From: Macrostomum lignano
Lineage: Eukaryota
Assembly (NCBI GenBank): GCA_002269645.1
Contig: NIVC01002689.1
Coordinates: 85,671 to 149,670 of the forward strand
Reading direction: 5' to 3'
DNA length: 64,000 nt
Shown here in pieces: positions 40,053 to 64,000 of the stretch. The translations under genes were made by a program, and so were the position numbers. The notes under the pieces were generated by a model. It did no database searches. It had not been told where the DNA came from and saw nothing but the letters and a program-made list of their open reading frames with translations. Position 1 is the first letter of the stretch; the number at the start of each line of letters is the position of its first letter.

Positions 40053-40083
<31 letters not shown>

Positions 40084-40131: not shown

Positions 40132-40188
<57 letters not shown>

Positions 40189-40254: not shown

Positions 40255-40288
<34 letters not shown>

Positions 40289-44645: not shown

Positions 44646-45407
44646 TCAGACCCGAAAGCTTCGCAGCGTTGCAGCCAGATCGAACTGGCCAGGAAAGTTC
44701 GGTGCTCCATCGCTGAACTTCGAGCTGTTGCTGCCCCCCAGCATCTCTCGGTCCCATTCGGCCTGCAGCTCCGTGATCAGCTCCTGCAGCGTCATCTTGG
44801 CCCTCTGCCGAATATACCGACGCGCGATGCACAGCATCACTTTCGTGTCGTTGAACCCGCTGCCGCAGGTGACTACGGCGTACGGACTGTCCAACTCCTG
44901 TTTGATCTGCCGCATCAGCCCGTTGTGGTCCTGGCGCAGATACGAGGTCGGGTAGTTCGGCGGCCGGCTCGACCGACTCCGAAGCCAGTCCAGACCGCGA
45001 GAAGCCTTGAGAAAGAAGCAGAGAGGGCTGAACTTGGCGTGCTCCATCTCGGCTGTGTCGGCCGGGTTCCAGTCTCTGAGGCCCAGATCGCAGAAGAAGC
45101 ACTTCACATGGTCTGCTTCTCCCAGATAGTAGAACCCGGCTTCTACCATGCTCTCCTGCGATTGGCAGCAATTCTTCTCTGACCAGCGGCCTTCCCTGAA
45201 AGTGGCCAGACGAGCTTCTCGACTCACATGCCTCTGGCTTGCTGCGCTTGATATCAAATAGACGCACGCGTTGATACATTCGTATTGGTCACCTTGGCGA
45301 CAGGACCGCGCTAGCGGGCCTAATCTTGCGTACAGAGTCTCCGAGGTGTAGCGCAGAGCCGCTTCAAGCTGCGACGCGCACTGTTCCGACAATGGCTCTT
45401 CGCTCAT
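44646..45407 (-). CDS. Inhibitor-of-apoptosis-like protein: one BIR domain plus a UBA-like segment, no RING; single coding exon (frame open up to a splice acceptor at 45445)
   Basis: EARLATF..W..SMVEAGFYYLGEADHVKCFFCDLGLRDWNPADTAEMEHAKFSPLC has the full C-x2-C-x16-H-x6-C zinc motif. SPYAVVTCGSGFNDTKVMLCIARRY..TLQELITEL resembles the IAP UBA domain. Confidence 0.85.
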   Translation of the reverse strand: MSEEPLSEQCASQLEAALRYTSETLYARLGPLARSCRQGDQYECINACVYLISSAASQRHVSREARLATFREGRWSEKNCCQSQESMVEAGFYYLGEADHVKCFFCDLGLRDWNPADTAEMEHAKFSPLCFFLKASRGLDWLRSRSSRPPNYPTSYLRQDHNGLMRQIKQELDSPYAVVTCGSGFNDTKVMLCIARRYIRQRAKMTLQELITELQAEWDREMLGGSNSSKFSDGAPNFPGQFDLAATLRSFRV

Positions 45408-45759
45408 GGACTGAAAACTGCTTTTCACCAAGTATTGCAGATGACCTGTAATAGTTGTAGCAGGAGATAGGCTAGAAATAGTTACTGACTATGATCTCCT
45501 GTTGGACATGATTTTTAATAGTTGGTTAGACCGTGTACTACCTAAAAGAGAATATCCGATATATTTTTAGCATCCTATATATAAAACCCTATCTTTGCAC
45601 AAGGCGCTACTGATTCAAGTAAGGAGGTACTAGCTTGTTGACTATGAATATACTTAAACGCGTACATGAATGTCCATTAAATTATATTAGCTGTTCCGCT
45701 TATATCAAGAATAATTACAGGAGGTCTTAGCGACATTCGGCAATATCCTCCCACAAGCC

Positions 45760-46154: not shown

Positions 46155-46405
46155 CACAAGCTCGAGTCTTCACAAGCTCGAGTCTTCACAAACTCGAATC
46201 TTCACAAGCTCAAGTCATCAGAAGCTCAAGTCATCACAACTCGAGTCTTCACAAGCTCAAAACTTCCCAAACTCGAGTCTTCACAAGCTCAAAACTTCCC
46301 AAACTCGAGTCTTCACAAGCTCAAAACTTCCCAAACTCGAGTCTTCACAAGCTCGAGTCGTCACAAGCTCGAATCTTCACAAGCTCGAATCTTGACAAAC
46401 TCGAA
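46155..46405 (+). repeat. ~15-16-bp repeat (CTCGAGTCTTCACAAG / CTCAAAACTTCCCAAA)
   Basis: Seen directly. Confidence 0.85.
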
Positions 46406-46909
46406 ATTTTGCATCGTCAATCCGTCATCATAGTCTACGTTTAAAAGGTCCTCGGCGACACTCAACGGATCAAGTATGGAGTAATACCCTGTAGGTGACG
46501 CACAAGAAACTTGAAATAGTCCGAATTGGCTGATCCCTGTGAAGCAACCAACAAAAAAGGAAATATTTTTGTACATTTTGTCACTCACCCGAGTACAAGA
46601 TTTGTAGCTACGAGTATCCCAACTCCAAGGACTGCATGCATTAGCAATACAATGCTGGTGTGTGGTACAAGGTACTACCTAATACACATTTATATGCAGC
46701 AGTGTGCAGAGACTAGCGACGAAAGTCACAGCCATTATCAGAGTGCATATGTTGGACTGTGTACTGGAGTGAGTGTACGCTGTAGTTTACTTTTGTAACT
46801 TGAATGTACAGTACGAGCTACGTGCGTGGCGTGCATGGGAAAGAATAGATGCATGTAAGAGACTTCTATTCAGTTCAGGTGCGCAAAAGCAGAAAGCAAT
46901 CATAACAAT

Positions 46910-47170
46910 TAACAATTGGCGCTACTAGAGTTGGCGCTACATGATTTGGCGCCACTAGGATTAACGCCACAAGGATTGGCGCTACTAGAGTTGGCGCTAC
47001 ATGATTTGGCGCCACTTGGATTGGCGCCGGATGGTTTTGGCGCCACAAGGATTGACGCCACAAGGATTGGCGCCACTAAAGTTGGCGCTACATGGTTTGG
47101 CGCTAGACGGGTTGGCGCCACAAGGATTAGCGCCACTAGAGTTGGCCCTACATGGTTTGGCGCTACCATG
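46910..47170 (+). repeat. 15-bp repeat TTGGCGCyACwAGrr
   Basis: Seen directly. Confidence 0.85.
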
Positions 47171-47506: not shown

Positions 47507-49514
47507 CTACCCTTTCAGTAACATCTCAAACTGTTTCATCGAATAGTAGTAATCGGAACTCCAATACCAGTTGATCCCGACAGCATACTGAAGAGTGGCA
47601 AGAGCTTCCGGGGGATTAAAGTACAGACCGTTCGGGTTTGTGCGATGGCAATCTTTATACCACCAGCCTCTTTTAAAGGTGACGCTGCAGCTTCTGACGG
47701 ATGAAATGTCGTTGTCCGAGTCGATGGTGCTGAACTGCATGCCATTGTGGAAGGCCATGCAGTCTCCAACGCCAGGGTGGCTGGCGGAGAACCCGGAGAT
47801 GCTCATGCGGAACTTGTCGGCCTCGCTGGCCACGGAGAAGCTGGAGTAGTCGGCCCAGAGCTCCGTGCCATTCCACAGCCTCATTCGCATGCGAAGTGCT
47901 CGACCAGACGGCCAGGTCAGAGAGTGCACAGCTCGCAGACCTGCAGTTGTCAAGCATAGCTCAATGCTGAGCAGCTCACAGCCACAGGAGGCCAGCGCTA
48001 TCAAAAAGTGCATCAATACCGTCATGACCGCACTGCACTGCACTCACCGAGCCAGTGGTTCGTGTGGGCTCCGTCTCCGAAGCCGGCTGCGTACTCGGTC
48101 CAGTTGCGATAGAAGTCTGTCGAGTTGTCCACCCGACGCTGGATGCTGATCCAGCAGTCGCTGAGTGACGTCACAAACACCTGCAGTGAGGCATTGAGAG
48201 CTGCGGTCAGGCAAGTGCTGTCAGTTACCTGGCCGTCAGGTGAGTCAGTGCACGCTTGCTACTCACCCTGATGCAGCACGGAGACTGGTGAGTGTGAGGC
48301 GTCAGTCTGCGACACACAGCGCCACTTCGGTTTGCTGGAATGAGAATGAGCTCAGCTGGGTGAGCAGCTTCATCAGGTTTAAGGCATGGAGCATGAGTAA
48401 TGATGTGAGATGCTAGCTGTGGCTGCACTGCTGCTCACACACTGCAGACACTGCTCACACACTGCAGACACTGCTTACACACTGCAGTCACTGCTCACAC
48501 ATTGCAGACACTGTGAGAGCCACTGCTGCTCACACTGCAGACACTGCTCACACACTGCAGACACTGCTCACACACTGCAGACACTTTCCACACACTACAG
48601 ACACTGTTCACACACTGCAGACACTGCTCACACACTGCAGACACTGTGAGAGCTCACACACTGCAGACACTGCTCACACACTGCAGACACTGTTCACACA
48701 CTGCAGACACTGCCCACACACTGCAGACACTGCTCACACACTGCAGACGCTACTCACACACTGCAGACACTGCTCACACACTGCAGACACTGCTCACACA
48801 CTGCAGACACTGCTCACACACTGCAGACGCTACTCACACACTGCAGACACTGCTCACACACTGCAGACACTTCTCACACACTGCAGACACTGTTCACACA
48901 CTACAGACACTGGTCACACACAGCGGACACTGCTCACACACTGCAAACACTGCTCACACACTGCAGACACTGTGAGAGCTCACACACTGCAGACACTGCT
49001 CACACACTGCAGACACTGTGAGAGCTCACACACTGCAGACACTGTTCACACACTGCAGACACTGTTCACACACTGCAGACACTGCCCACACACTGCAGAC
49101 ACTGCTCACACACTGCAGACGCTACTCACACACTGCAGACACTGGTCACACACTACAGTCACTGGTCACACACTACAGTCACTGGTCACACACTGCAGAC
49201 ACTGTTCACACACTACAGTCACTGGTCACACACAGGTCTCGGCAACGCAATGCAGCCAGGACTCACTCACCCACGATGCACTGGGGCTGATGTGCCCCAT
49301 CCCGAGGGATGAAGACCAGCAGCTGGTGAGCGAGCAGGTGCTTGGCAGCCAGTGCAGCGCACTGCAGCACATCGCTGGCTTGCTTGATGGAGGAGAGAGC
49401 GAAGTGGCGGACTCGACCGCCCGACCAGCTGCTGCTGTGGACTTCGTTCAGCTCGATGGCCGAAGCCGCAGCCGCTGCGGTCAGGAAAATCAGCAGCTTG
49501 GAGAACGTCTTCAT
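47507..49514 (-). CDS. Secreted fibrinogen-related protein copy 1 (signal peptide + degenerate PAN-like segment + FReD), about 318 aa; join(49514..49271,48412..48267,48180..48048,47940..47507)
   Basis: Signal MKTFSKLLIFLTAAAAASA. FReD motifs IQRRVDNSTDFYRNWTEYAAGFG..HWLG, FHNGMQFSTIDSDND, GWWYKDCHRTNPNG. Exons total 957 nt in frame. Confidence 0.87.
48430..49240 (+). repeat. 20-bp minisatellite CACACTGCAGACACTGCTCA in FReD copy 1 intron 1
   Basis: Seen directly. Confidence 0.95.
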
Positions 49515-51458
49515 CAGCCTCACTAATGTTTCTAACTGTGACATCTGTTTTAAGCGTAAGCTCTGTTTACCAGCTTTAATGACTGCCTTCACAACCCCTC
49601 CCTACTTTTGAGAGCCGGAGCAGGTGGTTTGGAGGATTGGACAGAATTCAGTTGGATGTCTTTAAGTTGAGTGAGTTTCTTATTGTGTCTAAGCCATCAG
49701 CTATATGGAGGCGAAATGCATGAGTGTCAGCATGCAAACAGTTATTAGCAGGTGAAAGACAGCTGTGCAAAAATCTTTTCCATTGTTCAACCATAATTTG
49801 GATGCTTTGCTAGCTACACACTTCTCCCTCTTATTTTTCAAGCTTTTTAATAAACTCTAGAGGAAAATCATTACTCTGTCAGTGCCATAATTGACACTTG
49901 GATTCAACAATGCCTAATATTGCGTTAGTGTCTGCCTGGCAAATCAACAGGTAATATTAAGATTGCCAATATTACTCTACAAGATATACTTCACTGTAGA
50001 TATAAGTTACTTTTAAAACAGTAAATTTTAAATTCAGTTACAGCTGTCTATCTCACCGTGACAGCTAAGAAAGTCCTTAGAGCAACCTTGCTAAAATAGC
50101 AAACATATTTTGAAAGTTACTTAACATGCAGACAGACCTCTGAGCTTTCGAAGCGCAGATAAGTGTTCAAAATTGAACATAATTTTATGAATCGCAATGA
50201 AATGTTGGTTTAACCAACGCGAGCGCTATATGACATCACTGCTACTTGTATTGGCAGCTGAAGTCTCAGTCACCAATGTCTCCTGCGCATTTTGCTCTGG
50301 AGGTTATTCTGAAAGACACTTCTTTGGTACCTTTGAGTAGTTCGATACGTTGCTGAACGTTACTAAATGCAAGAAGGTACTTTAAGTAGGGGGCTCAGCC
50401 CCTGGGATACTGGTTTTCCTCTTGGTAACACGGGTGAAGGGTATTAAATGTAAGAAGAGTTGGAACATGTATCATTGTGAAGAGTTTCAACTGATAACTG
50501 AGCCGTGAGTCCAATAAAGCAGCTGTAATCAAATATTATGATTATTATTTCCTAAATGTTTTTTACTACTATAGCATACTATACTACTATATAGTAACGC
50601 AGTCACATGAACTATTTAAGCATCTGAAATGTTAAAATGAAATTTCATAACTTCTTAAAACTTCTTAAAATTGCAGCAGAGTACTGTGTAGTTTTGAAGC
50701 AAAATTCCTTGCCGAAACAGTAGCAAAAGCAGTCCTCCACATTGTTGCTTCAGACAAGTACCTGTTTCAAGCTGCTGCACGCCGAACCCAAAGAATTTAA
50801 TTCTCCACTCCGCCCTTTCTGGCTGCTCAAAACTTATGCATTTTTTAAGAGTTGGGACATGTGCGCCTTGGAGAGGCGCTGAAGCAGTCATTGTAAGAAT
50901 CCCTGCCACTGCATGAATTCACTAGGGAGAAATTTCTTGAGTGACTCAAACAATAAGCACTCTAGCAGCTATAGTTTGTGGAGCGGTTGGCATGGCAACG
51001 AGGTTAACAACTCCCTGGCAAAGCTCTTTCCTTACTGGAAAAGGTGTTTTTTGTTAGCCCTGCAGGAAATTCTTTTCCCAATCAGACGCCCCCATCTATT
51101 TTATGCCTGAAAAGCTTGGAAATTGCACCAATACAATGGCTGCTGCAACTTGCAGTGACGTCGAAGAAAATTGTCTTCAAATGTCTCAGTTATGAATTTA
51201 TTCAACACGACAGAAGAATTTGATTATAAGCAGTTTTGTAAGCCTATAAGCATACTCAGTTGCTCATAGTTTCATACCCGAGTAGTTAGTTGAGATTTAG
51301 TAGAGTTTTCTAATTTTCGAGTTCTAAAATTAGGTTATTTGGTGCGTTTTTGGTGCCACAGGAACTTGGTTAACAGTCAATCGTCAAAGTTATGGCTCAA
51401 AGTTCGTTTACATCGCTATCAACCATACTCATAATAGAAAAATGTGATGATTGTACAC

Positions 51459-52394
51459 TCAGCACAGCTCAAACAAAGAAGCAACTTCAGAGTCGCTCAG
51501 AGCTCTCTCTGAGACTCCGAAGCATCTCATGAAGCCTTGGAACACGCGGTTGTGATCGGCACTGCGGCTGACGGCTCCGATCTGCACGCTGCTGCCGAAG
51601 TTCGCACAGGATGTCACAGCAGCTACCGGACCGTTAGTTGCTTTCTGAGTTCCGTTGACGTAGATCCTGACTTCCGGTGTCTGCTTGTCGTACACAGCGG
51701 CGATGTGGGTCCAACCGCTGGCCGTGTCGGTGGGTCCGGAAAATGAGAGTCCCGCCTCCGGGGACAAAACTACGAAGTGTATGGCTGTAACTGTGGGATA
51801 AAGCCAAAATCGAGTGTAGCTTGAGGTAGGCATTGTGAGGCCCTCCAGCAGAGGCATCGAACCCCTTGACGAATTGGTGACCTTGACCCACACTGACATG
51901 GTGAGGCTGGTGAGACACACCGAATTCAGCTCGTCAATGTTGAACCGCTCTGACACACCCGAATGACCAGTGAAGTTGACGGCGCTGTCCGTGTACTGCA
52001 TCGGGATGTTCTCCTGCAGGTCGAGATGGCCGCTGTTCGAGACCGCATTGCGAGTCCGAGTGGCGTTGCTCATGGGCCAGAAGGCGACGAGGCCGAGCTG
52101 GCGCAGGGCGCTCCACGACTGGCAGTCGGTGTCGTTCGTCAGACTGGCGGTCTGGAGGCTGTCCGACATGTTGCAGACGCCTGCGCGGTGGCTCCAGGCG
52201 ATGCAGGGACGACGGAGCTGAGAGCACAGGAAGGCGCACATGCGGGCGCTCGAGGCCGTCAGCGAGTGCTGCGGAGTCTGCGGCACCACGCAGCCGCCGA
52301 GCGAGATGCTGCTGTGCAGGGTTCCGTTGCCGCAGTGCACCAGGAGTGGCAGCAGCATCGCCGCAGTCAGTCCAGTTAGGATGCTGCAACTCAT
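51459..52394 (-). CDS. Secreted PAN/apple + LamG-like (concanavalin A-like/pentraxin fold) protein, copy A, 311 aa, single coding exon
   Basis: Hydrophobic signal; SARMCAFLCSQLRRPCIAWSHRAGVC (PAN pattern); GLVAFWPM, LTMSVWVK, GWTHIAAVYD..VRIYVNG, QIG..FQGFMRCFGVSERALSDSEV (LamG_3 pattern). Confidence 0.85.
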   Translation of the reverse strand: MSCSILTGLTAAMLLPLLVHCGNGTLHSSISLGGCVVPQTPQHSLTASSARMCAFLCSQLRRPCIAWSHRAGVCNMSDSLQTASLTNDTDCQSWSALRQLGLVAFWPMSNATRTRNAVSNSGHLDLQENIPMQYTDSAVNFTGHSGVSERFNIDELNSVCLTSLTMSVWVKVTNSSRGSMPLLEGLTMPTSSYTRFWLYPTVTAIHFVVLSPEAGLSFSGPTDTASGWTHIAAVYDKQTPEVRIYVNGTQKATNGPVAAVTSCANFGSSVQIGAVSRSADHNRVFQGFMRCFGVSERALSDSEVASLFELC

Positions 52395-54250
52395 GCCTTG
52401 GTGACGCTGTAGATAACGAACTCGTTCTTGCTTTTTAATTGGATTTTGACAGTTGCAATGCAGCTGCAGACTGGAGCTTCTCAGCAGCTTTTTTACTTTA
52501 ATGCTTTTCCCTCGGCTTTTGTCATTTAGAGTTTCTCTCGTTGGCTAAGGAAGCCTTCTTAAATATCAATCCCCGCTGTGAGAAAAATGAGGAAACGCAA
52601 AATTCCATTGTTCGCAGTACAGTCTCTCCCAATTGAGTTGTTAGGCGAGCTCAAGCCCATTGTCTGAATGTGGCTGCAATTTTAATCAAGGACAGAATTT
52701 CCTGCTGCCGCATTTTTCAGCTTAACAAGCAAGCTTTGATGATTTTTTGTCGGAGTTCTTTTTTTGCTGGGCTCTTTATAACTTATTCAGAATTTCTTCT
52801 CTCCCGGTTTGCCTCCTGTAAATTGCTTCTAGCAAGCTGTGTTCCTCTCCCATGAATTTCTGCGCGCAGGTATGCTGAGGAACCGACAGCTCTAATTAGC
52901 AATGCGACAGTCCACAGAAGCCGCGCGGCAAAACCCTGCCGGCTGACGCATGTAAACTGAGGTGGCAGATCCTCAGCAGTGCAGACTCATAAGTTGTAAT
53001 TCTAGCTACGAACTCAGGATTTGACTGTGGCTATAGCTACCATGCCCTGCTGCGACTCATTGTGTCGACAAGGGGTTTCACTTTTACTTTAAAAGTTCCT
53101 TGAATTCGCAGAATTTTCTGGGTAAAATGGCTTCCAGAGGTCATTTCTTAAAAGTGGCGTGCGTGAAAGAAAGTATTTTATCTTGTCTCTATCCCAATGA
53201 TGAACGCTTACAATTCAAGCATCCATTCACCTCGATTCACCCGCTATTTCCCCTGATTTATCCATCATTCACTTACCGATTCACCCCCTGATTCATCCAA
53301 TCAGATTCACTTCTGACTGACCATCTATACTTCACTTTTAATTAAGCCTCGATCCAACATCTATCATATTCACTGCCGAACCACCTGAACTCATCTTCAG
53401 ATTCTTGGAAATTAGAAAATAACCTGCGGTTTTGAAATACAGTAAAGGCAAACCTGAGTATGTCATAAACGTACCAGTTTCGATTGGAAAAAAAGTACTC
53501 GATTATATCATGTCCTCGTGCGTTTATGTTACTGGCTTGAAAGTGAAATGAATTGACAGTTCATCCGATCGCGAGGATGATGAAGAATAGACCGCCACAG
53601 GTGTGCTACGAAGACTGTTTTTGATTTGAAAAATTAAGTCTTCCTCGTCGCTAGGAGAAGAGGAGCCACGCAAACTTCAAATATTGAGGCACAGTTGGTG
53701 TGTCCTTTGCTCAACCAGTGTTTGGTTTGCCTAGAATTACTTTAGGTTCTTTGAAAAGAAAATCATCCCAGGATTGAATGCTTCACTCTGATACAAAGCC
53801 AGGTTAGCCAACACTGTATTTAGTCTCCCTTTGTTTAATAGTGCCAAGTCTTGAAACACAATCAGATATGCTGCGTTTCGCTCAGGTTATTAGTTTTCAA
53901 GAAAAAATATTGGTTACTTATTCCACAAGGATCTTTACTACAAAAGAAAATTCAGCAGTATAGCCTTTCATCGATTTAAAAATTAAAAGAACAGTTATTA
54001 TTCTAAGAACAGCATCCGCATAGTGCCTTTGAAACATGAATAAATATGTGTCACACAGACTACTGAAGAGCGCTACTTTTACGCTACACTTTACTAGACG
54101 TCCAAAGGGCGGAAAATATTGAAAAGAACTGCTGCACTAACTAAAAGTTAAAAAATCTTTCTGAGTCGGTTAGGCGAATATTGTTCCAAAGTTAGAAATT
54201 GTTTGAATTGGATGAGCTCCGAGTACTCCGTTTGTGATGGCATAACCTGC

Positions 54251-55186
54251 TCAACAGAGCTTCATTAAATGGCGAACTTCAGCCTGGCTCAGGGCTCTCT
54301 GTGAGACGCTGAAGCATCTCATGTAGCCCTGGAACACGCGGTTGTGCGTCACGTCGCTAGTCGAGCCGCCGATTTGAGCAGTGGTGCCGAAATTCGCGCA
54401 CGAGTTCAGAGTGGCCGGTATACCAGAGATGGCCTTCTCCGTACCGTTCGAGTAGATCTTCACTGACGGCGTCTGCTTGTCATATACCGCGGTAAAGTGG
54501 GTCCAACCGCTGGCCGTGTCGGTGGGTTCGTCGGCTGTGCAGTGAGAAATTGGCGACTCAATCACCACGTGGAGGCTCGTACTGTTTGGATGAAGCCACA
54601 GTCGAGTGAAGTATCCTCCTGGCAGGGTCATGCTATCCAGCAGAGGCATCGGACCTCTCGACGCATTGGTGACCTTGACCCACACGGACATGGTGAGGCT
54701 GGTGAGACACACCGAATTCAACTCGTCAATGTTAAACCGCTCTGACACACCCGACTGACCAGTGAAGTTGACGGCGCTGTCCGTGTACTGCATCGGGATG
54801 TTCTCCTGCAGGTCGAGATGGCCGCTGTTCGAGACCGCATTGCGAGTCCGAGTGGCGTTGCTCATGGGCCAGAAGGCGACGAGGCCGAGCTGGCGCAGGG
54901 CGCTCCACGCCTGGCAGTCGGTGTCGTTCGTCAGACTGGCGGTCTGGAGGCTGTCCGACATGTTGCAGACACCTGCGCGGTGGCTCCAGGCGATGCAGGG
55001 ACGACGGAGCTGAGAGCACAGGAAGGCGCACATGCGGGCGCTCGAGGCCGCCAGCGAGTGCTGCGGAGTCTGCGGCACCACGCAGCCGCCGACCGAGATG
55101 CTGCTGTGCAGGGTTCCATTGCCGCAGTGCACCAGGAGTGGCAGCAGCATCGCCACAGCGAGTCCAGTTAGGATGCTGCAACTCAT
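54251..55186 (-). CDS. Secreted PAN/apple + LamG-like protein, copy B, 311 aa, single coding exon
   Basis: Direct paralogue of 51459..52394, offset 2792 bp; same motifs. Confidence 0.85.
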   Translation of the reverse strand: MSCSILTGLAVAMLLPLLVHCGNGTLHSSISVGGCVVPQTPQHSLAASSARMCAFLCSQLRRPCIAWSHRAGVCNMSDSLQTASLTNDTDCQAWSALRQLGLVAFWPMSNATRTRNAVSNSGHLDLQENIPMQYTDSAVNFTGQSGVSERFNIDELNSVCLTSLTMSVWVKVTNASRGPMPLLDSMTLPGGYFTRLWLHPNSTSLHVVIESPISHCTADEPTDTASGWTHFTAVYDKQTPSVKIYSNGTEKAISGIPATLNSCANFGTTAQIGGSTSDVTHNRVFQGYMRCFSVSQRALSQAEVRHLMKLC

Positions 55187-55876
55187 GCCTTGGTGACGCT
55201 GTAGATAACGAAATCGTTCTTGTCTTTGAGAAGGGGATTTTATTTCAAATCGTCATTCTCATAGTTGGCTACGTCTTTAGGAGCCTTGCAAGAGTTTGGC
55301 ATCCACGATTGAAGGGTTGAAAACAATGGATGTGAAGAGGTTCCTTTATAAGCACCAGCTCCACAACCCAGACCCTACCAGTAAGGCTTCACTTCAAGCT
55401 GGCAATTTAATTGCTTCTCTGCCCCTGTCAGCAGCTTCTCCTACTGACTTGGAATTCTAGTGAGAAGTAGTTTGATTGGATGTGAGAGAGTTTAAGAATT
55501 TTCCTCATTACGGAAACGCATTCAAAGTCTAAAAAAAGAAACGTTGAGTAATGACTAATTTCTGAGCCTTAGAAAATTCCGCAGAGAAGGATTCTAGGAA
55601 TAACAGAAACTGAAATTCACTGCCAACTTCCTCGTCTGGCCTCTTGCGATGCCTTTCTATTCTAATCCCATTTGATTATTCTCGTCCATCAACGGGTGGC
55701 TATCACATGCTGGAATTACCTGATTAGATACTAAAGCAGTCCGTTGCGTTAGGCACATCTGCAGAGTGTTCTACTTCCCACAGAAAATCATAAAGTTGTT
55801 AAGGTGAAGGTTATTCATAGATTGCTACTGAGTAGACTGGCGGACATTTGCACACCTAAACCTTAAATATGAATCG

Positions 55877-56652
55877 TGTTACTATTTATACGGAAAGGAT
55901 GATTCATGTTGCTATTTATAAACGAAATGAGTCATGTTACTATTTATAACCAGAAATTGAATCATATTACTTTTTATAGCGAAACAGATGAATCATGTTG
56001 CTATTTATATCTCGCGAAATCGCCCTTAAATACAAGTGGTCCGAAGCGGACCCGAGCAACAACAGAGACAACAGAGAACCTTCCAGAGGGAAGAAGAGCT
56101 CCGAAGAGGAAGTCGGCGAGGAACTTTCTTCAGACCAAGTCAACCGAGACTCGGCTGAGTTCTTGCGGTAAGCCTTACTCATTTGCGCCAGGTGTTAAGA
56201 TCCGACTCGATATTATTGTTGTGACGGAGTCTATTTGAGACTCCATTTGTTGTAATCTCCAGAAGGACTACCCTGATAGCCATCAGAAGACTTATCAGTG
56301 ATTACCGGAGCTATACCTAGAGTGCATTAAGACACTGCTAGAAGGAGAAGGCTTATTGAAACCGCAGCGCGGCGCAGGGATCCCCCATTGTTGATTCAAA
56401 GCTTCTGATTGGTCCGAACTACAGATACCCACCGGAGATAACTTCGTTGGAAGTACACAAGGAACCAGGACCAGAACAACTGATTCAAGACGTCTGAACT
56501 TCCTGGAGGTCGAGAACACCGCTTAGGAAGAGAACTACTAATCCGGATTCAAGGTAATAGATACCTTCATTTAATTACTGGGTTGCCTAGCAGTAGCTAG
56601 AAGTGATTGTTCCTTGATTACTGAGAGAGTCTTGGTAGTAAGGAAGACATCA
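55877..56652. mobile_element. Possible solo LTR (TG...CA) with internal ~36-bp repeats at its left end
   Basis: Begins TGTTAC, ends CATCA; flanks AATCG / AATCA match 4 of 5. No internal retrotransposon ORF. Confidence 0.25.
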
Positions 56653-56784
56653 AATCAGATGGGGGAGTTTCGGACTCATTTTAAAATAAGGTCATTATCT
56701 ACCCTAGCGCAACGCCTTTTGGCGGCGTCTTCCCACATCCAGTTCTGAGGCAGTGCTGTCCAACTTCTGAGGGCACACAAGCTC

Positions 56785-57365
56785 ATCATGCACACGCTCA
56801 CGCAGGGTGTACACTGCGGCCCATTTCATGCACACGCTCACGCAGGGTGTACACAGCGGCCCATTTCATGCACACGCTCACGCAGGGTGTACACAGCGGC
56901 CCATTTCATGCACACGCTCACGCAGAGTGTACACAGCGGCCCATTTCATGCACACGCTCACGCAGGGTGTACACAGCGGCCCATTTCATGCACACGCTCA
57001 CGCAGGGTGTACACAGCGGCCCATTTCATGCACCGGCCCATTTCATGCACACGCTCACGCAGGGTGTACACAGCGGCCCATTTCATGCACACGCTCACGC
57101 AGGGTGTACACAGCGGCCCATTTCATGCACACGCTCACGCAGGGTGTACACAGCGGCCCATTTCATGCACACGCTCACGCAGGGTGTACACAGCGGCCCA
57201 TTTCATGCACACGCTCACGCAGGGTGTACACAGCGGCCCATTTCATGCACACGCTCACGCAGGGTGTACACAGCGGCCCATTTCATGCACACGCTCACGC
57301 AGGGTGTACACAGCGGCCCATTTCATGCACACACTCACGCAGGGTGCACACAGCGGCCCATTCAC
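56785..57365 (+). repeat. 40-bp minisatellite CACACGCTCACGCAGGGTGTACACAGCGGCCCATTTCATG embedded in a SINE-like copy
   Basis: Seen directly; the unit and its flanks match the 45.8-kb SINE body. Confidence 0.9.
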
Positions 57366-58031
57366 TTTCTAATCGTCGGGCCAATTTTTTGTGCACAAGC
57401 CTCAAAGTATAGCTTTATCTCTAGGAGTTCACTATTCAACGTTATAATGGAACAAACTTTTCGAAAATCTGTACAGCTCACTCGAATTTATGAAACGAGA
57501 TAAAGTTGTCTAAACATAGGAGGCTTTGGAAAACTTCTAGCTGAGAGTATTCCAAGCTCTATCTCGGGGTATCCTTGCCTTGGCTAATAGCAGACAACAA
57601 TTTTATGCATCTAAGCTATCCACATATAGTTTAAAACGATAACTTGTTGCATATTTCATCAAACATACTCATGCAAGGCAGTATAATCATTAAATGATCA
57701 CGCTTCAGAGAGGCGTTGTAAAAGTTTTAGACTGGGCAGGCACACAGAATCATATTGAGCCATCAAGCCAACAATAAAACAAATTAATTTGGATTTTACC
57801 TGCTGTAGCAGTGCAATAAACTAAAGCAGCAATTCATCTATTGCTCTCTCCATCCAGGAAATCAATAGCAAGACTTGGAAGACTGTACCGACCAGACCCT
57901 CTCGCTGCATGTGTTGCCTGCGAGAGATGAAACTGTATAAATTACACACTTTGCAGCCAGTGGTCACGGCAGCTCCAGTGGCGACAGACACGACTCACGT
58001 GGACTCAGAAACGCTTGGAATTTTCGTAAAA

Positions 58032-59954
58032 ATGCAACTCGCTCAACTCCTGCTGCTCTTCTCAGCCGTGGCCGCCGGCAGCGCTTTGGACTTGCACGAA
58101 GTCCACAGCAGCAGCTGGTCGGGCGGTCGAGTCCGCCACTTCGCTCTCTCCTCCATCAAGCAAGCCAGCGATGTGCTGCAGTGCGCTGCACTGGCTGCCA
58201 GGCACCTGCTCGCTCACCAGCTGCTGGTCTTCATCCCTCGGGACGGGGCACAGCAGCCCCAGTGCATCGTGGGTGAGTGAGTCCTGGCTGCATTGCGTTG
58301 CCGAGACCTGTGTGTGAACAGTGACTGTAGTGTGTGAACAGTGTCTGCAGTGTGTGGGCAGTGTCTGCAGTGTGTGACCAGTGTCTGCAGTGTGTGAACA
58401 GTGTCTGCAGTGTGTGAGCAGTGTCTGCAGTGTGTGAGCAGTGTCTGCAGTGTGTGGGCAGTGTCTGCAGTGTGTGAGCAGTGTCTGCAGTGTGTGAGCA
58501 GTGTCTGCAGTGTGTGAACAGTGTCTGCAGTGTGTGAGCAGTGTCTGCAGTGTGTGAGCAGTGTCTGCAGTGTGTGGGCAGTGTCTGCAGTGTGTGAGCA
58601 GTGTCTGCAGTGTGTGAACAGTGTCTGCAGTGTGTGAGCAGTGTCTGCAGTGTGTGAACACTGTCTGCAGTGTGTGAGCAGTGTCTGCAGTGTGTGGGCA
58701 GTGTCTGCAGTGTGTGAGCAGTGTCTGCAGTGTGTGGGCAGTGTCTGCAGTGTTTGAGCAGTGTCTGCAGTGTGTGGGCAGTGTCTGCAGTGTTTGAGCA
58801 GTGTCTGCTGTGTGTGAGCAGTGTCTGCAGTGTGTGAGCAGTGTCTGCAGTGTGTGAGCAGTGTCTGCAGTGTGTGAGCAGTGTCTGCAGTGTGTGAGCA
58901 GTGTCTGCAGTGTGTGAACAGTGTCTGCAGTGTGTGAGCAGTGTCTGCAGTGTGTGGGCAGTGTCTGCAGTGTGTGAGCAGTGTCTGCAGTGTGTGAAAA
59001 GTGTCTGCAGTGTGTGAGCAGTGTCTGCAGTGTGTGAATAGCAGTGCAGCCACAGCATCTCACAGCATTACTCATGCTCCATGCCTTAAACCTGATGAAG
59101 CTGCTCACCCAGCTGAGCTCATTCGCATTCCAGCAAACCAAAGTGGCGCTGTGTGTCGCAGACTGACGCCTCACACTCACCAGTCTCCGTGCTGCATCAG
59201 GGTGAGTAGCAAGCGTGCACTGACTCACCTGACAGCCAGGTAACTGACAGCACTGCCTGACCGCAGCTCTCAATGCCTCACTGCAGGTGTTTGTGACGTC
59301 ACTCAGCGACTGCTGGATCAGCATCCAGCGTCGGGTGGACAACTCGACAGACTTCTATCGCAACTGGACCGAGTACGCAGCCGGCTTCGGAGAGGGAGCC
59401 CACACGAACCACTGGCTCGGTGAGTGCAGTGCAGTGCGGTCATGACGATATTGATGCACTTTTTGATAGCGCTGGCCTCCTGTGGCTGTGAGCTGCTCAG
59501 CATTGAGCTGTGCTTGACAACTGCAGGTCTGCGAGCTGTGCACTCTCTGACCTGGCCGTCTGGTCGAGCACTTCGCATGCGAATGAGGCTGTGGAATGGC
59601 ACGGAGCTCTGGGCCGACTACTCCAGCTTCTCCGTGGCCAGCGAGGCCGACAAGTTCCGTTTGAGTGTCTCCGGTTTCCATGGCAGCCACCCGAGTCTGG
59701 GAGACTGTATGGCCTTCCACAATGGCATGCAGTTCAGCACCATCGACTCGGACAACGATGCAGGACATGGCAGCTGCAGTCTCGCCTACAGAGGAGGCTG
59801 GTGGTATAATGGCTGTCATCAGACCAACCCGAACGGCCTGTACTTTAATCCCCCAGAAGCTTTTCACCTGTCAGTGGAAGCCGTCGGTATTTGCTGGTAT
59901 TATCCCTTCGGCAACTTCTACTCGATGAAGGAGTTTGAAATGCTTGTCAAGTAA
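58032..59954 (+). CDS. Secreted fibrinogen-related protein copy 2, about 315 aa; join(58032..58272,59056..59201,59287..59419,59527..59954)
   Basis: Signal MQLAQLLLLFSAVAAGSA; same FReD motifs; exons total 948 nt in frame; inverted paralogue of copy 1. Confidence 0.87.
58305..59040 (+). repeat. 20-bp minisatellite GTGTGAGCAGTGTCTGCAGT in FReD copy 2 intron 1
   Basis: Seen directly; generates ORFs 58062..59342 and neighbours. Confidence 0.95.
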
Positions 59955-60179
59955 TTTTAGTTTTAACAAAGAGGTTTTTCAAGTGGATAAACTAACGGGT
60001 TTTTGGAAGAGTTGTTTGAAAATCTGTAAATATTTTTGGAATCTAACAACAAAGTCTGCAGTTGTTCCTTTCTTCTTTGCTGTTTATCCGGACGGATTTT
60101 CCTCGACCGAGTTTGTCTATGGGGAAACCCTAGTTATGGCTGTGCAGAAAGGCAAGTCTAATGAGAAACTAGTAAAGCG

Positions 60180-60365
60180 TAGGAGTGTGTACAGCGGCCC
60201 TAACTTTATTTATCGTTAGGCAGGTACCCCGTGCCTTCGGGGTTGGCCTTCAAGGGCGTTAATTGCACGAGCAGAGCCAAGCCGAGATTCCAATTTAGGC
60301 CCAAATTAATGTGACTGCACCTGGAATCGAGCCTGGGCCGCTGGCACATCAGAGGGCCGCGCTTT
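60180..60365 (-). mobile_element. Diverged copy of the tRNA-derived SINE-like family
   Basis: GTGTACAGCGGCCC..GTACCCCGTGCCTTCGGGGTTGGCC body; B-box-like GGCTCGATTCC on the minus strand (60323-60333). Confidence 0.55.
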
Positions 60366-60649
60366 AGAAAGTTTAATTAACAAAAAATTGAGACTAGTGA
60401 AAAAATATATATAAAGATCTTCATATGCTCCGTTTTACTGATATAAATATTTTGTTTGTTGCACCTTCCTCCGCACCCATGAGAAATGCCGGCTGCTTCA
60501 CCCGGCTGCTTGCCGTTATTTTTCTTCTCTTTTTTTCGAATAAGAGTGCTTTGATTATTTTTACTCAATAATTAACTTCTTCGGTGTTTGACTTTGAAAT
60601 TTTGTGCATTTGCGTTTTCATTCGGGTACACCGTAGTGTAAAGACACTA

Positions 60650-62260
60650 ATTCTTCAGTAAGCCCCGATTCTTCTGGGCTGTCTTATGCCAGACGCCAAT
60701 TCTTCAGTAAGCCCCGATTCTTCTGGGCTGTCTTATGCCAGACACCAATTCTTCAGTAAGCCCCGATTCTTCTGGCTGTCTTATGCCAGACGCCAATTCT
60801 TCAGTAAGCCCCGATTCTTCTGGGCTGTCTTATGCCAGACGCCAATTCTTCAGTAAGCCCCGATTCTTCTGGGCTGTCTTATGCCAGACGCCAATTCTTC
60901 AGTAAGCCCCGATTCTTCTGGGCTGTCTTATGCCAGACGCCAATTCTTCAGTAAGCCCCGATTCTTCTGGGCTGTCTTATGCCAGACACCAATTCTTCAG
61001 TAAGCCCCGATTCTTCTGGGCTGTCTTATGCCAGACACCAATTCTTCAGTAAGCCCCGATTCTTCAGTAAGCCTTGATTCTTACTCGTAAGTAGACCTTG
61101 TTTCTTTATTAAGCACCGATTCTTCAGTAAGCCTTGATTGTTAAGTAGACCTTGATTTTTCAGTAAGTCTTGATTCTTCAGTAAGTCTTGATTCTTCAGT
61201 AAGCCTTGATTCTTAAGTAGACCTTGATTTTTCAGTAAGTCTTGATTCTTCAGTAAGCCTTGATTCTTACTCGTAAGTAGACCTTGTTTCTTTATTAAGC
61301 ACCGATTCTTCAGTAAGCCTTGATTCTTAAGTAGACCTTGATTTTTCAGTAAGTCTTGATTCTTCAGTAAGTCTTGATTCTTCAGTAAGCCTTGATTCTT
61401 AAGTAGACCTTGATTTTTCAGTAAGTCTTGATTCTTCAGTAAGCACCGATTCTTCAGTAAGTCTTGATTCTTCAGTAAGTCTTGATTCTTCAGTAAGCCT
61501 TGATTCTTAAGTAGACCTTGATTCTTCAGTAAGTCTTGATTCTTCAGTAAGCACCGATTCTTCAGTAAGTCTTGATTCTTCAGTAAGTCTTGATTCTTCA
61601 GTAGACCTTGATTCTTCAGTAAGCACCGATTCTTCAGTAAGTCTTGATTCTTAAGTAGGCCTTGATTCTTCAGTAAGCCCCGATTCTTCAGTAAGCCCCG
61701 ATTCTTTAGTAAGCACCGATTCTTCAGTAAGCCCCAATTCTTCAGTAAGCCCCGATTCTTCAGTAAGCCCCGATTCTTCAGTAAGCCCCGATTCTTCAGT
61801 AAGCCCCGATTCTTCAGTAAGCCCCGATTCTTTAGTAAGCACCGATTCTTCAGTAAGTCTTGATTCTTCAGTAGACCTTGATTCTTCAGTAAGCACCGAT
61901 TCTTCAGTAAGTCACGATTCTTCAGTAAGCCCTGATTCTTCAGTAAGCTCCGATTCTTCAGTAAGTCTTGATTCTTCAGTAGGCCTTGATTCTTCAGTAG
62001 GCCTTGATTCTTCAGTAAGCCCCGATTCTTCAGTAGGCCTTGATTCTTCAGTAAGCACCGATTCTTCAGTAAGCACTGATTCTTCAGTAAGCACCGATTC
62101 TTCAGTAGGCCTTGATTCTTCAGTAAGTCTTGATTCTTCAGTAGGCCTTGATTCTTCAGTAAGCACCGATTCTTCAGTAGGCCTTGATTCTTCAGTAGGC
62201 CTTGGTTCTTCAGTAGCCTTGATTCTTCAGTAAGCCCCGATTCTTTAGTAAGCCCGACTC
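60650..62260 (+). repeat. Compound minisatellite: ~50-bp unit (60650-61070) followed by variant 18-bp units GATTCTTCAGTAAGnCnn
   Basis: Seen directly; the 50-bp unit contains the 18-bp core. Confidence 0.95.
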
Positions 62261-62814
62261 TCCAACAAGTCCCGATTATTCATTAGGCTCCGATTTTTCT
62301 ACAAGCGTCGAATCTTTAATACCGTTAGTAAGCCCAGATGCTTCCGTAAGCGCTGTGATTATTCAGTAAGCGCTTATTTTCCCATACAGGTAGTCCTTTA
62401 TCAGACGCCTAATAGTCCGCATTGAGTGCCAATCATAGCCAGCAGCACTGACGGTGCAATGTTTAACTTCAGTAAAAAATAAACAGCTGACGCGAAAAGA
62501 AGCTACCAGGTGCTCAGCCTGGACCATAAAAAATTCCAGTTTGCATGCAGGCTGCTGCCAATAGAAGCCGAGTGTCAACATCACAGCTTCTGTAAAACAA
62601 TGGGGGGGGGTTACTAGCGGCCACTGGGCACTAATTCTCAGACAGGAAATCAATATAGCCAGGAAATTGTTGACTTTCGCTTAGCAAATGCAAATCAACA
62701 TACAGAGCCCAGGATCCTTAAAATCAACTGGACTGGAGAACCGAAATTGTACACGTTGAATTTTTTCACTACTAAGGAGATTTCGCTTTGATAATTAAGG
62801 ATTTCTGATAAATT

Positions 62815-63080
62815 GCAGGCTAGCTGTAGCCTATTGAGCCTCGGACTCACGGCTGAAAGGTCGGGGTTCGATTCCCGATCCCACTGGAACAATTTGTGTC
62901 CTTGAGCAAGACAATTAACTCTACATTGCTTCAGTTCACCCAGCTGTAAAATGGGTTACCAGCATTAGCTGGGGTAATTGAGGGTGTGCGGCGACCCCCC
63001 AGTCCTTGGACTGAACAGCCGTACGCAGCCTTCAGATGCGCCGCGCAAATAGCTGCGGCTGAGCTGTCGGTTGCTCATCT
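62815..63080 (+). mobile_element. tRNA-derived SINE with a conserved central domain (V-/Nin-Deu-type resemblance)
   Basis: tRNA-like head with B-box GGTTCGATTCC (62865-62875), then GTGTCCTTGAGCAAGACA (62896-62913) and CACCCAGCTGTAAAATGGGTTACC (62937-62960). Confidence 0.7.
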
Positions 63081-63307
63081 GCCATTGGATGCAGTGCTGA
63101 CTAACTTTCGCCAGCTCGCTTCCAGTCCAGTTGACTTCCAGAGTCCATGACTTGGTGGAAAATTTATGAACAAGAACACCCAGCCTCTCACAGTGACTAC
63201 GGCAAGAATTTTATAGCTATCAAGTACCATTGCCAGTGGTCACGGCAGCTCCAGTGGCGACAGACACGACTCACGTGGACTCAGAAACGCTTGGAATTTT
63301 CATAAAA

Positions 63308-64000
63308 ATGCAACTCGCTCAACTCCTGCTGCTCATCTCAGCCGTGGCCGCCGGCAGCGCTTTGGACTTGCACGAAGTCCACAGCAGCAGCTGGTCGGGC
63401 GGTCGAGTCCGCCACTTTGCTCTCTCCTTCATCAAGCAAGCCAGCGATGTGCTGCAGTGCGCTGCACAGGCTGCCAAGCACCTGCTCGCTCATCAGCTGA
63501 TTGTCTTCATCCCTCGGATGGGGCACAGCAGCCGCAGTGCATCGTGGTGAGTGAGTCCTGGCTGCATTGCGTTGCCGAGACCTGTGTGTGACCAGTGACT
63601 GTAGTGTGTGAACAGTGTCTGTAGTGTGTGACCAGTGTCTGCAGTGTGTGACCAGTGACTGTATTTGTGACCAGTGACTGTAGTGTGTGAGCAGTGACTG
63701 TAGTGTGCGACCAGTGACTGTGGTGTGTGACCAGTGACTGTAGTGTGCGACCAGTGACTGTAGTGTGTGACCAGTGACTGTAGTGTGCGACCAGTGACTG
63801 TAGTGTGTGACCAGTGACTGTAGTGTGTGACCAGTGACTGTAGTATGTGAACAGTGACTGTAGTGTGTGAACAGTGTCTGCAGTGTGTGACCAGTGACTG
63901 TAGTGTGTGACCAGTGACTGTATGTGTGAGCAGTGTCTGCAGTGTGTGACCAGTGTCTGCAGTGTGTGAGCAGTGTCTGCAGTGTGTGAACAGTGTCTGC
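63308..64000 (+). pseudogene. Fibrinogen-related protein copy 3, exon 1 (63308..63546) and start of intron 1; two single-G deletions relative to copy 2; continues beyond the window
   Basis: Near-identical to 57955-58320. CGGGAC becomes CGGAT and GTGGGTGAG becomes GTGGTGAG, making exon 1 239 nt rather than 241 nt. Could be assembly error. Confidence 0.55.
63590..64000 (+). repeat. 20-bp minisatellite variant GTGTGACCAGTGACTGTAGT in FReD copy 3 intron 1
   Basis: Seen directly. Confidence 0.9.

What the first reader, a model, noticed from the sequence alone, without database searches (positions are those of the whole stretch)
47507..64000. Cluster of secreted PAN + lectin-domain genes of two families: candidate diversifying recognition locus
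Seen: five genes with signal peptides, arranged FReD(-), LamG(-), LamG(-), FReD(+), FReD(+, partial). LamG genes carry a PAN/apple cysteine pattern; FReD genes carry a reduced version (QCAALAA..PQCIVG) with only two Cys. In both families paralogues combine a near-constant block with a strongly diverged C-terminal binding region. Established: FReD proteins (ficolins, tachylectins, snail FREPs) and pentraxin/LamG folds act as invertebrate pattern-recognition or adhesion molecules. Inference: an undescribed flatworm locus making secreted receptors with a shared stalk and variable binding heads (immunity, mucus/adhesion or reproduction).
Basis: partly seen in the sequence, partly recalled or inferred. 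Interest (0 to 1): 0.75.

Follow-up and report, generated by a model that had tools for sequence, protein, structure and literature searches.

The report
Flatworm lectin gene cluster shaped by gene conversion
This is a real cluster of five secreted lectin-like genes in the flatworm Macrostomum lignano, but its "constant part plus variable end" pattern comes from neighbouring copies recently overwriting each other's front parts (gene conversion), not from fast adaptive change, so it is a fairly ordinary multigene-family locus.

Summary
The five genes exist in the stated order and orientation: FReD(-), LamG(-), LamG(-), FReD(+), FReD(+, cut by the window end). The organism is Macrostomum lignano; one FReD is 100% identical over 188 aa to a UniRef protein of that species.

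Corrections:
- The FReD genes have four exons. A 20-bp minisatellite fills intron 1 in all three copies.
- The FReD "reduced PAN" is not supported. Its second Cys is the canonical first Cys of the fibrinogen domain. No profile, profile-profile or structure evidence links the leader to PAN.
- The LamG genes do carry a six-Cys apple-like pattern, but the Pfam PAN_1 score is below threshold.

The mosaic is real and sharp, yet it is a difference in age, not in selection.
- FReD codons 26-199: dS 0.008. Codons 200-299: dS 1.0, dN/dS 0.22.
- LamG codons 1-185: dS 0.06. Codons 186-311: dS 0.94, dN/dS 0.39.
- FReD introns 2 and 3 are as identical (98-99%) as the exons around them.
- One UniRef LamG paralogue is a B-type/A-type chimera.

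Best reading: old paralogues whose 5' two-thirds are homogenised by gene conversion. Lectin function is inferred, not shown.

The parts
47507..49514 (-). FReD gene 1 (299 aa). Exons 49514-49271, 48355-48267, 48180-48048 and 47940-47507. Signal-peptide-like N-terminus MKTFSKLLIFLTAAAAASA.
   Evidence: Splice sites read from the sequence: G|GTGAGT donors and CAG acceptors. The exon joins match UniRef paralogue P0151. Pfam Fibrinogen_C E 4e-49. Residues 112-299 are 100% identical to UniRef M. lignano P0153.
48431..49233 (-). 20-bp minisatellite (about 40 copies) inside intron 1 of FReD gene 1.
   Evidence: TRF. Pattern search: all 85 matches in the window lie in intron 1 of the three FReD genes, always in gene-sense orientation, against 0 expected by chance.
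47810..49445 (-). Homogenised (gene-conversion) tract of FReD gene 1 shared with gene 4. It runs from about codon 24 to about codon 199 and includes introns 1-3.
   Evidence: dS 0.008 inside against 1.0 in the head and 1.8 in the signal peptide; Fisher p 1e-18. Introns 2 and 3 are 98.8% and 98.1% identical. Both flanks cannot be aligned.
51459..52394 (-). LamG-A: single-exon gene of 311 aa. Signal-peptide-like N-terminus, six-Cys apple-like region (about aa 35-91), Laminin_G_3 jelly-roll (about aa 100-311).
   Evidence: Pfam Laminin_G_3 63.5 bits; PAN_1 E 0.025, below threshold. AF2 gives a jelly-roll at pLDDT 70-94. The best Foldseek match is the PTX3 pentraxin domain.
54251..55186 (-). LamG-B: tandem paralogue of LamG-A, 311 aa, single exon.
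   Evidence: Pfam Laminin_G_3 59.7 bits. 86% nucleotide identity to LamG-A over 960 nt.
51840..52434 (-). Homogenised tract of LamG-A shared with LamG-B (55227-54632). It runs from 40 nt upstream of the ATG to about codon 185.
   Evidence: dS 0.06 in codons 1-185 against 0.94 in codons 186-311; Fisher p 6e-16. BLAST extent.
58032..59954 (+). FReD gene 4 (296 aa). Exons 58032-58272, 59113-59201, 59287-59419 and 59527-59954. It lies head-to-head with gene 1, with the LamG pair between them.
   Evidence: Pfam Fibrinogen_C E about 2e-52. Best solved relatives are ficolin-2 and ficolin-1, E about 1e-33. AF2 pLDDT is above 90 from residue 120 onward.
58310..59037 (+). 20-bp minisatellite (about 36 copies) in intron 1 of FReD gene 4.
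63308..64000 (+). FReD gene 5, partial. Exon 1 is followed by the intron-1 minisatellite (63584 to the window end). Exon 1 has two 1-nt deletions relative to gene 4 (opposite g4 58240 and 58271) and an in-frame TGA at 63548-63550.
   Evidence: 91% identity to gene 4 from 76 nt upstream of the ATG. It is either a pseudogene or carries homopolymer assembly errors; I could not tell which.

Best explanation
Window 47.5-64 kb holds a Macrostomum lignano cluster of five paralogous genes for small, probably secreted, lectin-fold proteins.

Gene content:
- Three genes encode a short Cys-containing leader followed by a complete but divergent fibrinogen-related domain (FReD, ficolin-like).
- Two intronless genes encode an apple/PAN-like six-Cys module followed by a LamG-like (Laminin_G_3, pentraxin-like) jelly-roll.

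Evolution:
- The paralogues are old; the synonymous divergence of their 3' thirds is about 1.
- Non-allelic gene conversion has recently overwritten their 5' two-thirds, introns included. This happened between the head-to-head FReD copies and between the tandem LamG copies.
- The result is a nearly identical block joined to old, different C-terminal parts. In FReD the C-terminal part is the P subdomain; in LamG it is the second half of the jelly-roll.
- The heads themselves evolve under net purifying selection, so each head type is a maintained, functional variant.

Shown: gene identity, exon structure, species, the mosaic and its synonymous-site signature.
Inferred: secretion, glycan or acetyl-group binding by the heads, and any role in immunity, mucus or reproduction.
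For: - Family assignments: Pfam, solved-structure relatives, and AF2 plus Foldseek.
- Species: 100% identity to P0153 and 91% to P0001, both UniRef M. lignano.
- Duplications: self-BLAST gives 89% over 1933 nt for FReD1 against FReD4 (inverted), 86% over 960 nt for the LamG pair, and 91% for FReD4 against FReD5.
- Gene conversion, synonymous sites: FReD has 1.0 synonymous differences in 124.7 sites in codons 26-199, against 31.8 in 57.5 sites in codons 200-299 (p 1e-18). LamG has 8.0 in 133.5 against 47.8 in 89.5 (p 6e-16).
- Gene conversion, non-coding: FReD introns 2 and 3 are 98-99% identical, like exons 2 and 3, while the signal-peptide codons and both flanks are saturated or cannot be aligned.
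- Chimera: UniRef paralogue P0001 equals LamG-B over residues 1-200 and is LamG-A-like over residues 201-311.
- Family scale: FReD blocks are 95-100% identical within the group but 70% identical to the sister subfamily P0156/P0157. Heads within the group (38-67%) are as far apart as heads between subfamilies (44-64%). This is the signature of concerted evolution of the block only.
- Purifying selection on heads: dN/dS 0.22 and 0.39.
- Conserved FReD functional landmarks: the DSDND motif aligns to DQDND of ficolin-2, and the C...GGWWY..CH disulphide region is present.
Against: - Only one pairwise comparison per family has nucleotide data. Pairwise dN/dS cannot exclude positive selection at a few sites, and LamG codons 181-225 reach about 0.8-0.9.
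- No expression data were available, so function and even transcription are unverified.
- Gene 5 looks broken.
- P0001 and the other UniRef models are automatic predictions from another assembly of a polyploid, repeat-rich genome. Some are visibly wrong (P0002, P0003, P0152), so the chimera could be an assembly or annotation artefact.
- Polishing of long-read assemblies can itself homogenise paralogues.
- Signal peptides were judged only by hydrophobicity.
Confidence: 0.72

Rival explanations
1. This is a diversifying recognition locus in which a selectively constrained shared stalk carries heads driven apart by positive selection for new ligand specificities, as in immune pattern-recognition receptors.
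For: - The mosaic is real and recurs over at least five head types.
- The FReD divergent part is roughly the ligand-binding P subdomain.
- LamG codons 181-225 have dN/dS of about 0.8-0.9.
- Recombinant combinations exist (P0001).
Against: - Synonymous sites and introns are as invariant as replacement sites in the block. Within the block dN/dS is about 1.6 (FReD, on 6 differences in total) and 0.39 (LamG), so constraint does not explain it.
- The heads have dS of about 1 and dN/dS of 0.22-0.39.
- The block/head boundary in LamG cuts through the middle of one domain.
- There are no expression or infection-response data.
Confidence: 0.15
2. A recent whole-gene duplication followed by locally raised mutation (targeted hypermutation) in the 3' third. 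This would raise dS and dN together there.
For: High dS and high dN are both confined to the head. Repeat-rich surroundings might favour instability.
Against: - The signal-peptide codons and both flanks are also saturated or cannot be aligned. The conserved tract is an island bounded on both sides, as a conversion tract would be, not one end of a young duplicate.
- Heads of different paralogues are as far apart as heads of the sister subfamily, which implies age.
- The head of gene 1 is 100% identical to P0153, so it is stable.
Confidence: 0.04
3. Assembly artefact. The identical blocks arise from collapse or consensus polishing of similar paralogues or homeologues in a polyploid, repeat-rich genome.
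For: - Gene 5 has two homopolymer-type 1-nt deletions, which are typical long-read errors.
- UniRef models from another assembly contain obvious errors.
Against: - The block still carries a few private differences, 6 in FReD and 18 in LamG.
- Minisatellite copy numbers differ between copies.
- An independent protein set shows the same block with other heads.
- The boundaries are sharp, and each copy is embedded in unique flanks.
Confidence: 0.06

Closest known systems
Ficolin / tachylectin-5 type fibrinogen-related lectins (Pfam PF00147)
   Same: - The FReD is recognisable from about Cys78 to the C-terminus. The best solved relatives are ficolin-2 and ficolin-1 at E about 1e-33.
- The Ca-site-like DSDND motif and the P-domain disulphide region are present.
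- The protein is small and has a signal-peptide-like N-terminus.
   Different: - There is no collagen-like region. Pfam reports only Fibrinogen_C and no G-X-Y run is visible.
- The A subdomain is divergent. The Pfam match starts at profile position 29-35. The canonical second Cys (CDM) is Val, with a CC pair 3-4 residues upstream.
- GGGW is replaced by SDCW.
- A private leader of about 55 aa with one Cys precedes the domain.
Snail FREPs and other expanded invertebrate FReD families (Biomphalaria FREPs, mosquito and bivalve FReDs)
   Same: Clustered, multi-copy FReD genes in a lophotrochozoan. Gene conversion and recombination among paralogues are discussed for such families in the papers listed, for example PMC7588048 and PMC3313920. 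I read only their titles and abstracts.
   Different: - No IgSF domains are present.
- The variable part here is the FReD P subdomain itself. From my own knowledge, the diversified part described for Biomphalaria FREPs is the IgSF region.
- Nothing here bears on somatic diversification.
Concerted evolution with escape of one gene segment (partial gene conversion in tandem or inverted paralogues)
   Same: There is a sharp, bounded tract in which exons, introns and synonymous sites are all homogenised. It is flanked by old sequence, and chimeric family members exist.
   Different: Nothing distinguishes this locus from the general phenomenon. The only local peculiarity is a conserved 20-bp minisatellite inside the tract. 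Whether it promotes recombination was not tested.
LamG-like jelly-roll proteins (Pfam PF13385 / SMART LamGL) and pentraxins
   Same: - Laminin_G_3 scores above threshold.
- The AF2 jelly-roll is structurally closest to the PTX3 and CRP pentraxin domains, TM-score normalised to the target 0.6-0.7.
   Different: - There is no pentraxin Pfam hit and no H-x-C-x-S/T-W-x-S signature.
- By sequence, the nearest relatives outside Macrostomum are prokaryotic or metagenomic LamG_3 proteins at 25-36% identity.
- The fusion to an apple-like six-Cys module was seen only in M. lignano proteins.

Membership tests
Fibrinogen-related domain (PF00147) | Profile match above Pfam's gathering score | tested here: met
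   178 bits against a cut-off of 22, E about 2e-52, for the spliced gene 4. 168 bits for gene 1.
Fibrinogen-related domain (PF00147) | Canonical A-subdomain disulphide (first Cys ... CDM Cys) | tested here: inconclusive
   The first Cys is present: C78 lies in the column where 40 of 51 homologues have Cys. The canonical second Cys column holds Val, with Cys107 and Cys108 lying 3-4 residues upstream. AF2 confidence here is only 59-75.
Fibrinogen-related domain (PF00147) | P-subdomain Ca-site motif (D-x-D-x-D) and disulphide (C...GGWWY..C) | tested here: met
   DSDND and SCSLAYRGGWWYNGCH align to DQDND and NCAVMFQGAWWYKNCH of ficolin-2.
Ficolins | Collagen-like G-X-Y region N-terminal of the FReD | tested here: not met
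   Pfam reports no Collagen match and no G-X-Y run is visible in the 77-residue leader.
Snail-type FREPs | One or two IgSF domains upstream of the FReD | tested here: not met
   Pfam finds no Ig-family hit in the models at E up to 10. The leader is too short at about 55 aa.
PAN/apple domain (PF00024) in the LamG genes | Profile match above the gathering score | tested here: not met
   PAN_1 scores 14.9 bits against a cut-off of 21.4 (E 0.025) for the isolated region. PAN_4 scores 11.8 bits.
PAN/apple domain (PF00024) in the LamG genes | Six-Cys apple pattern with a C-x3-C-x5/6-C core, and the apple fold | tested here: inconclusive
   The pattern C35...C53-x3-C57-x6-C64-x9-C74...C91 is present and conserved in the diverged paralogue copies of P0002. 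The AF2 model of this region has pLDDT 30-40, so the fold could not be checked. There is no PDB sequence hit.
   Pfam gives 0 families at E up to 10 for five leaders. hhalign probability is 0.2%. One of the two Cys belongs to the FReD itself. AF2 pLDDT is 30-67.
Laminin_G_3 / LamG-like jelly-roll (PF13385) | Profile match above the gathering score, and a jelly-roll fold | tested here: met
   63.5 and 59.7 bits against a cut-off of 27.6. The AF2 beta-sandwich has pLDDT 70-94. Foldseek matches pentraxin and other ConA-like jelly-rolls at E about 1e-9.
Pentraxins (PF00354) | Pentraxin profile match or signature | tested here: not met
   No Pentaxin hit at E up to 1. No PDB sequence hit at E up to 0.01. 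The similarity is at fold level only.
Diversifying (positively selected) recognition-receptor locus | dN/dS above 1 in the variable region, with a constant region kept by constraint (low dN but normal dS) | tested here: not met
   Heads have dN/dS 0.22 and 0.39. Blocks have dS 0.008 and 0.06, with equally identical introns. This is a pairwise test only, so site-level selection was not testable with two sequences.
Diversifying (positively selected) recognition-receptor locus | Expression, secretion, and response to or binding of microbes | not testable with these tools
   No transcript or read data were available. The contig look-ups returned nothing.

The most novel reading that the evidence does not exclude
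The locus is a germline head-swapping system. Recurrent gene conversion and crossover within the homogenised block, possibly promoted by the conserved intron-1 minisatellite, re-assorts old, selectively maintained heads, as in the P0001 chimera. This would give the flatworm a combinatorial repertoire of secreted lectins for recognition. One of the two families would also be built on a LamG-like jelly-roll whose nearest relatives are prokaryotic. Those genes are intronless and fused to an apple-like module seen only in Macrostomum, so the domain might have come by ancient horizontal transfer.
Probability: 0.15. Interest if true: 0.6.

Novelty: new member of a known kind. Interest (0 to 1): 0.33.

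Why it matters
Free-living flatworms have almost no characterised humoral recognition molecules. M. lignano is a transgenic model in which such genes could be tested, so a defined cluster with correct gene models is a useful starting point.

The locus is also a clean teaching case. A "conserved stalk plus hypervariable head" pattern can be produced by partial gene conversion alone. Synonymous-site and intron comparisons are needed before diversifying selection is invoked.

The apple-like + LamG_3 architecture, and its prokaryote-leaning LamG domain, is a small curiosity worth a proper phylogeny. None of this changes current understanding of FReD or LamG families.

Tried and rejected
- First FReD models rejected. 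I tried a three-exon model and a model with a 40-nt mini-exon. I dropped both once UniRef P0151 showed the 89-nt exon 2.
- FReD leader as PAN rejected. Pfam found nothing for five leaders. hhalign against the LamG N-terminus gave probability 0.2%. The PDB profile search gave only a chance hit at E 1.3. The AF2 model has low confidence there.
- LamG PAN fold left open. AF2 with six PAN-bearing sequences gave pLDDT 30-40, and the PDB profile search found nothing.
- Genomic context of paralogues unavailable. The look-up of encoding contigs had no record for the window's LamG protein or for P0001. No further nucleotide sequences were therefore available for dN/dS.
- Recent horizontal transfer of LamG not supported by composition. 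GC3 is 0.75-0.77, against 0.67-0.72 for neighbouring host genes.
- Structural matches to receptor-binding domains of clostridial neurotoxins were not pursued. I read them as the generic lectin-like jelly-roll: identity is only 9-15%, there is no sequence-level PDB hit and no toxin domain.
- Rfam found nothing in the window.
- Literature searches found no description of Macrostomum FReD or LamG genes.

Full report
**What is there**

The window is eukaryotic and rich in minisatellites. Between 47.5 and 64 kb there are five copies of two gene families and no others (tblastn).
- Two uninterrupted 311-codon ORFs on the minus strand, 52394-51459 and 55186-54251, match Pfam Laminin_G_3 at 63.5 and 59.7 bits against a cut-off of 27.6.
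- Three genes carry fibrinogen-related domain sequence: gene 1 (minus strand), gene 4 (plus strand) and gene 5 (plus strand, cut by the window end).

- Translating the supposed intron revealed the missing FReD core, CWISIQRRVDNSTDFYRNWTEYAAGFG...HWLG.
- An alignment with UniRef paralogues showed one more 89-nt exon, AELIRIPANQSGAVCRRLTPHTHQSPCCIR.
- The resulting four-exon models use consensus G|GTGAGT donors and CAG acceptors.
  - Gene 1: 49514-49271, 48355-48267, 48180-48048, 47940-47507.
  - Gene 4: 58032-58272, 59113-59201, 59287-59419, 59527-59954.
- They give proteins of 299 and 296 aa that match Fibrinogen_C at E about 1e-49 to 1e-52.
- Intron 1 of all three genes is filled by a 20-bp minisatellite. 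It occurs nowhere else in the window: 85 matches against 0 expected.
- Gene 5's exon 1 has two single-base deletions relative to gene 4 and an in-frame stop. It is either a pseudogene or carries homopolymer assembly errors.

**Organism**

Gene 1 residues 112-299 are 100% identical to a UniRef Macrostomum lignano protein, P0153. LamG-A is 91% identical to A0A1I8I643 (P0001). All close relatives are M. lignano proteins.

**The proteins**

All four complete genes begin with a hydrophobic, signal-peptide-like N-terminus and have no later membrane-span-like segment. This is a hydropathy heuristic only.

*FReD*
- The best solved relatives are ficolin-2 and ficolin-1, E about 1e-33. The Ca-site-like DSDND motif and the C...GGWWY..CH region are conserved.
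- AF2 models residues 120-296 at pLDDT above 90.
- There is no collagen or Ig region, so these are neither ficolins nor snail-type FREPs.

*The FReD "reduced PAN" (QCAALAA..PQCIVG)*
- It does not hold. In a 59-sequence alignment the Cys of PQCIV falls in the column where 40 of 51 other FReDs have their canonical first Cys. The SG that follows falls in the conserved sG column. The FReD therefore starts there.
- What precedes it is a leader of about 55 residues with a single Cys and one predicted helix.
- Pfam finds nothing in five such leaders.
- hhalign against the LamG N-terminus gives probability 0.2%.

*LamG*
- The N-terminus has a conserved apple-type six-Cys pattern, C35...C53-x3-C57-x6-C64-x9-C74...C91.
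- PAN_1 reaches only 14.9 bits (E 0.025), and AF2 is unconfident there. "PAN-like" is probable, not shown.
- The jelly-roll (about residues 100-311) is modelled at pLDDT 70-94. It is structurally closest to pentraxin domains such as PTX3 and CRP, and to other lectin-like jelly-rolls.
- By sequence, its nearest relatives outside Macrostomum are prokaryotic or metagenomic LamG_3 proteins at 25-36% identity.

**The mosaic and what causes it**

Self-BLAST shows three duplications.
- Gene 1 against gene 4: 89% over 1.9 kb, inverted and head-to-head.
- The LamG pair: 86% over 960 nt, in tandem.
- Gene 4 against gene 5: 91%, in tandem.

It extends to at least five head types among UniRef paralogues, with blocks 95-100% identical and heads 38-67%.

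The codon analysis shows that the contrast lies in synonymous divergence.

| Family | Region | dS | dN | dN/dS | Fisher p on synonymous sites |
|---|---|---|---|---|---|
| FReD | codons 26-199 | 0.008 | 0.013 | not informative (6 differences) | |
| FReD | codons 200-299 | 1.0 | 0.23 | 0.22 | 1e-18 |
| FReD | signal-peptide codons | 1.8 | 0.42 | | |
| LamG | codons 1-185 | 0.06 | 0.024 | 0.39 | |
| LamG | codons 186-311 | 0.94 | 0.36 | 0.39 | 6e-16 |

- FReD introns 2 and 3 are 98-99% identical, the same as the exons around them. The flanks on both sides cannot be aligned.
- The constant block is therefore a bounded tract of recent homogenisation, that is gene conversion between old paralogues. 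It is not a selectively constrained stalk.
- Independent support comes from P0001. It equals LamG-B for residues 1-200 and is LamG-A-like for residues 201-311.
- Further support comes from the sister subfamily P0156/P0157. Its block is only 70% identical to this group's block, yet its head is no more distant than the group's heads are from each other.
- The tract boundary falls near the B/P subdomain border in FReD, so the old part is roughly the ligand-binding P subdomain. The subdomain limits are recalled from the ficolin literature and applied through the alignment.
- In LamG the boundary cuts through the middle of the jelly-roll.

**Selection**

Head dN/dS is 0.22 and 0.39. This indicates net purifying selection, so each head is a maintained variant.

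Two caveats apply. Two sequences per family cannot reveal site-specific positive selection. One LamG stretch, codons 181-225, has dN/dS of about 0.8-0.9.

**Mechanism proposed**

These are secreted, possibly oligomeric lectins. The odd Cys counts suggest a free Cys. Specificity would reside in the old C-terminal parts. The family evolves by tandem and inverted duplication plus partial gene conversion. The conversions also create new block/head or head/head combinations.

Binding, secretion, expression and biological role are inferred from family knowledge only.

**Comparison and novelty**

Clustered, expanded FReD families with recombination among paralogues are well known in invertebrates (papers listed). 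Partial gene conversion that leaves one segment divergent is a general phenomenon.

The new points are modest:
- corrected gene models for an uncharacterised M. lignano cluster;
- a divergent FReD A subdomain;
- an apple-like + LamG_3 architecture seen only in Macrostomum, with prokaryote-leaning LamG affinities. Its GC3 gives no sign of recent transfer.

I found no paper describing these genes. They exist only as automatic UniProt entries, several of them mis-modelled.

**Verdict**

The "reduced PAN" and the "stalk under constraint, heads under diversifying selection" readings are not supported. The best explanation is concerted evolution by gene conversion in a lectin gene cluster. Interest is low to moderate.

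Noticed in passing
window 3610-4770, 5306-5930, 8138-9421, 12184-13960, 14685-15376, 17751-19584, 21913-22621, 26776-28270, 39866-41150, 46155-47163, 56786-57362, 60642-62254: The whole window is studded with minisatellites with units of 15-97 bp. They produce long spurious ORFs on both strands, for example a 426-aa ORF through the FReD intron-1 array. Arrays of 40-bp, 49-bp and 18-bp units lie between the cluster genes.
   Followed up: partly
window 51963-52379 (+) and 54818-55171 (+); UniRef A0A1I8IHS7 (P0002) and A0A1I8IN27 (P0003): Long antisense ORFs overlap both LamG genes. The same antisense translation is embedded in the 1519-aa UniRef model P0002, which also fuses two further PAN-LamG copies with a diverged PAN to PLAT-like sequence. 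P0003 fuses a LamG copy to a MATE transporter. These public models are chimeric mis-annotations, but they show that more family members lie at other loci.
   Followed up: partly
window 59420-59526 (FReD gene 4, intron 3); UniRef P0152, P0154, P0155: Several UniRef paralogue models contain ALASCGCELLSIELCLTTAG between HWL and LRAVHS. This is a read-through of part of intron 3. It is either a mis-prediction or an alternative splice form.
   Followed up: no
window 63516 and 63545 region; TGA at 63548-63550: Exon 1 of FReD gene 5 lacks one G in each of two G-runs relative to gene 4. This shifts the frame and changes the splice phase. It could be a pseudogene or a long-read homopolymer error.
   Followed up: partly
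window 2104-3573 (+), 6692-7075 (+), 21558-23124 (-), 28657-29091 (-), 31061-33473 (-), 44646-45431 (-): Ordinary host genes lie upstream of the cluster: a WD40 beta-propeller protein, a flavoprotein (PPC-decarboxylase-type) fragment, a TPR protein, an IQ-motif protein, an M16 peptidase (mitochondrial processing peptidase-like) and a single-BIR-domain protein directly next to FReD gene 1.
   Followed up: partly
LamG-A residues about 100-311 (window 52097-51459): Every named relative of this LamG_3 domain outside Macrostomum is prokaryotic, archaeal, phage or metagenomic. The genes are intronless while the neighbouring FReD genes have three introns. Codon composition is host-like. This may hint at ancient horizontal origin, or it may only reflect database composition.
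   Followed up: partly
Pomacea canaliculata protein P0180: A mollusc protein combines a Pfam-recognised PAN_1 domain with a FReD. The PAN + FReD architecture therefore exists elsewhere, even though it is not demonstrable in the Macrostomum FReD genes.
   Followed up: no
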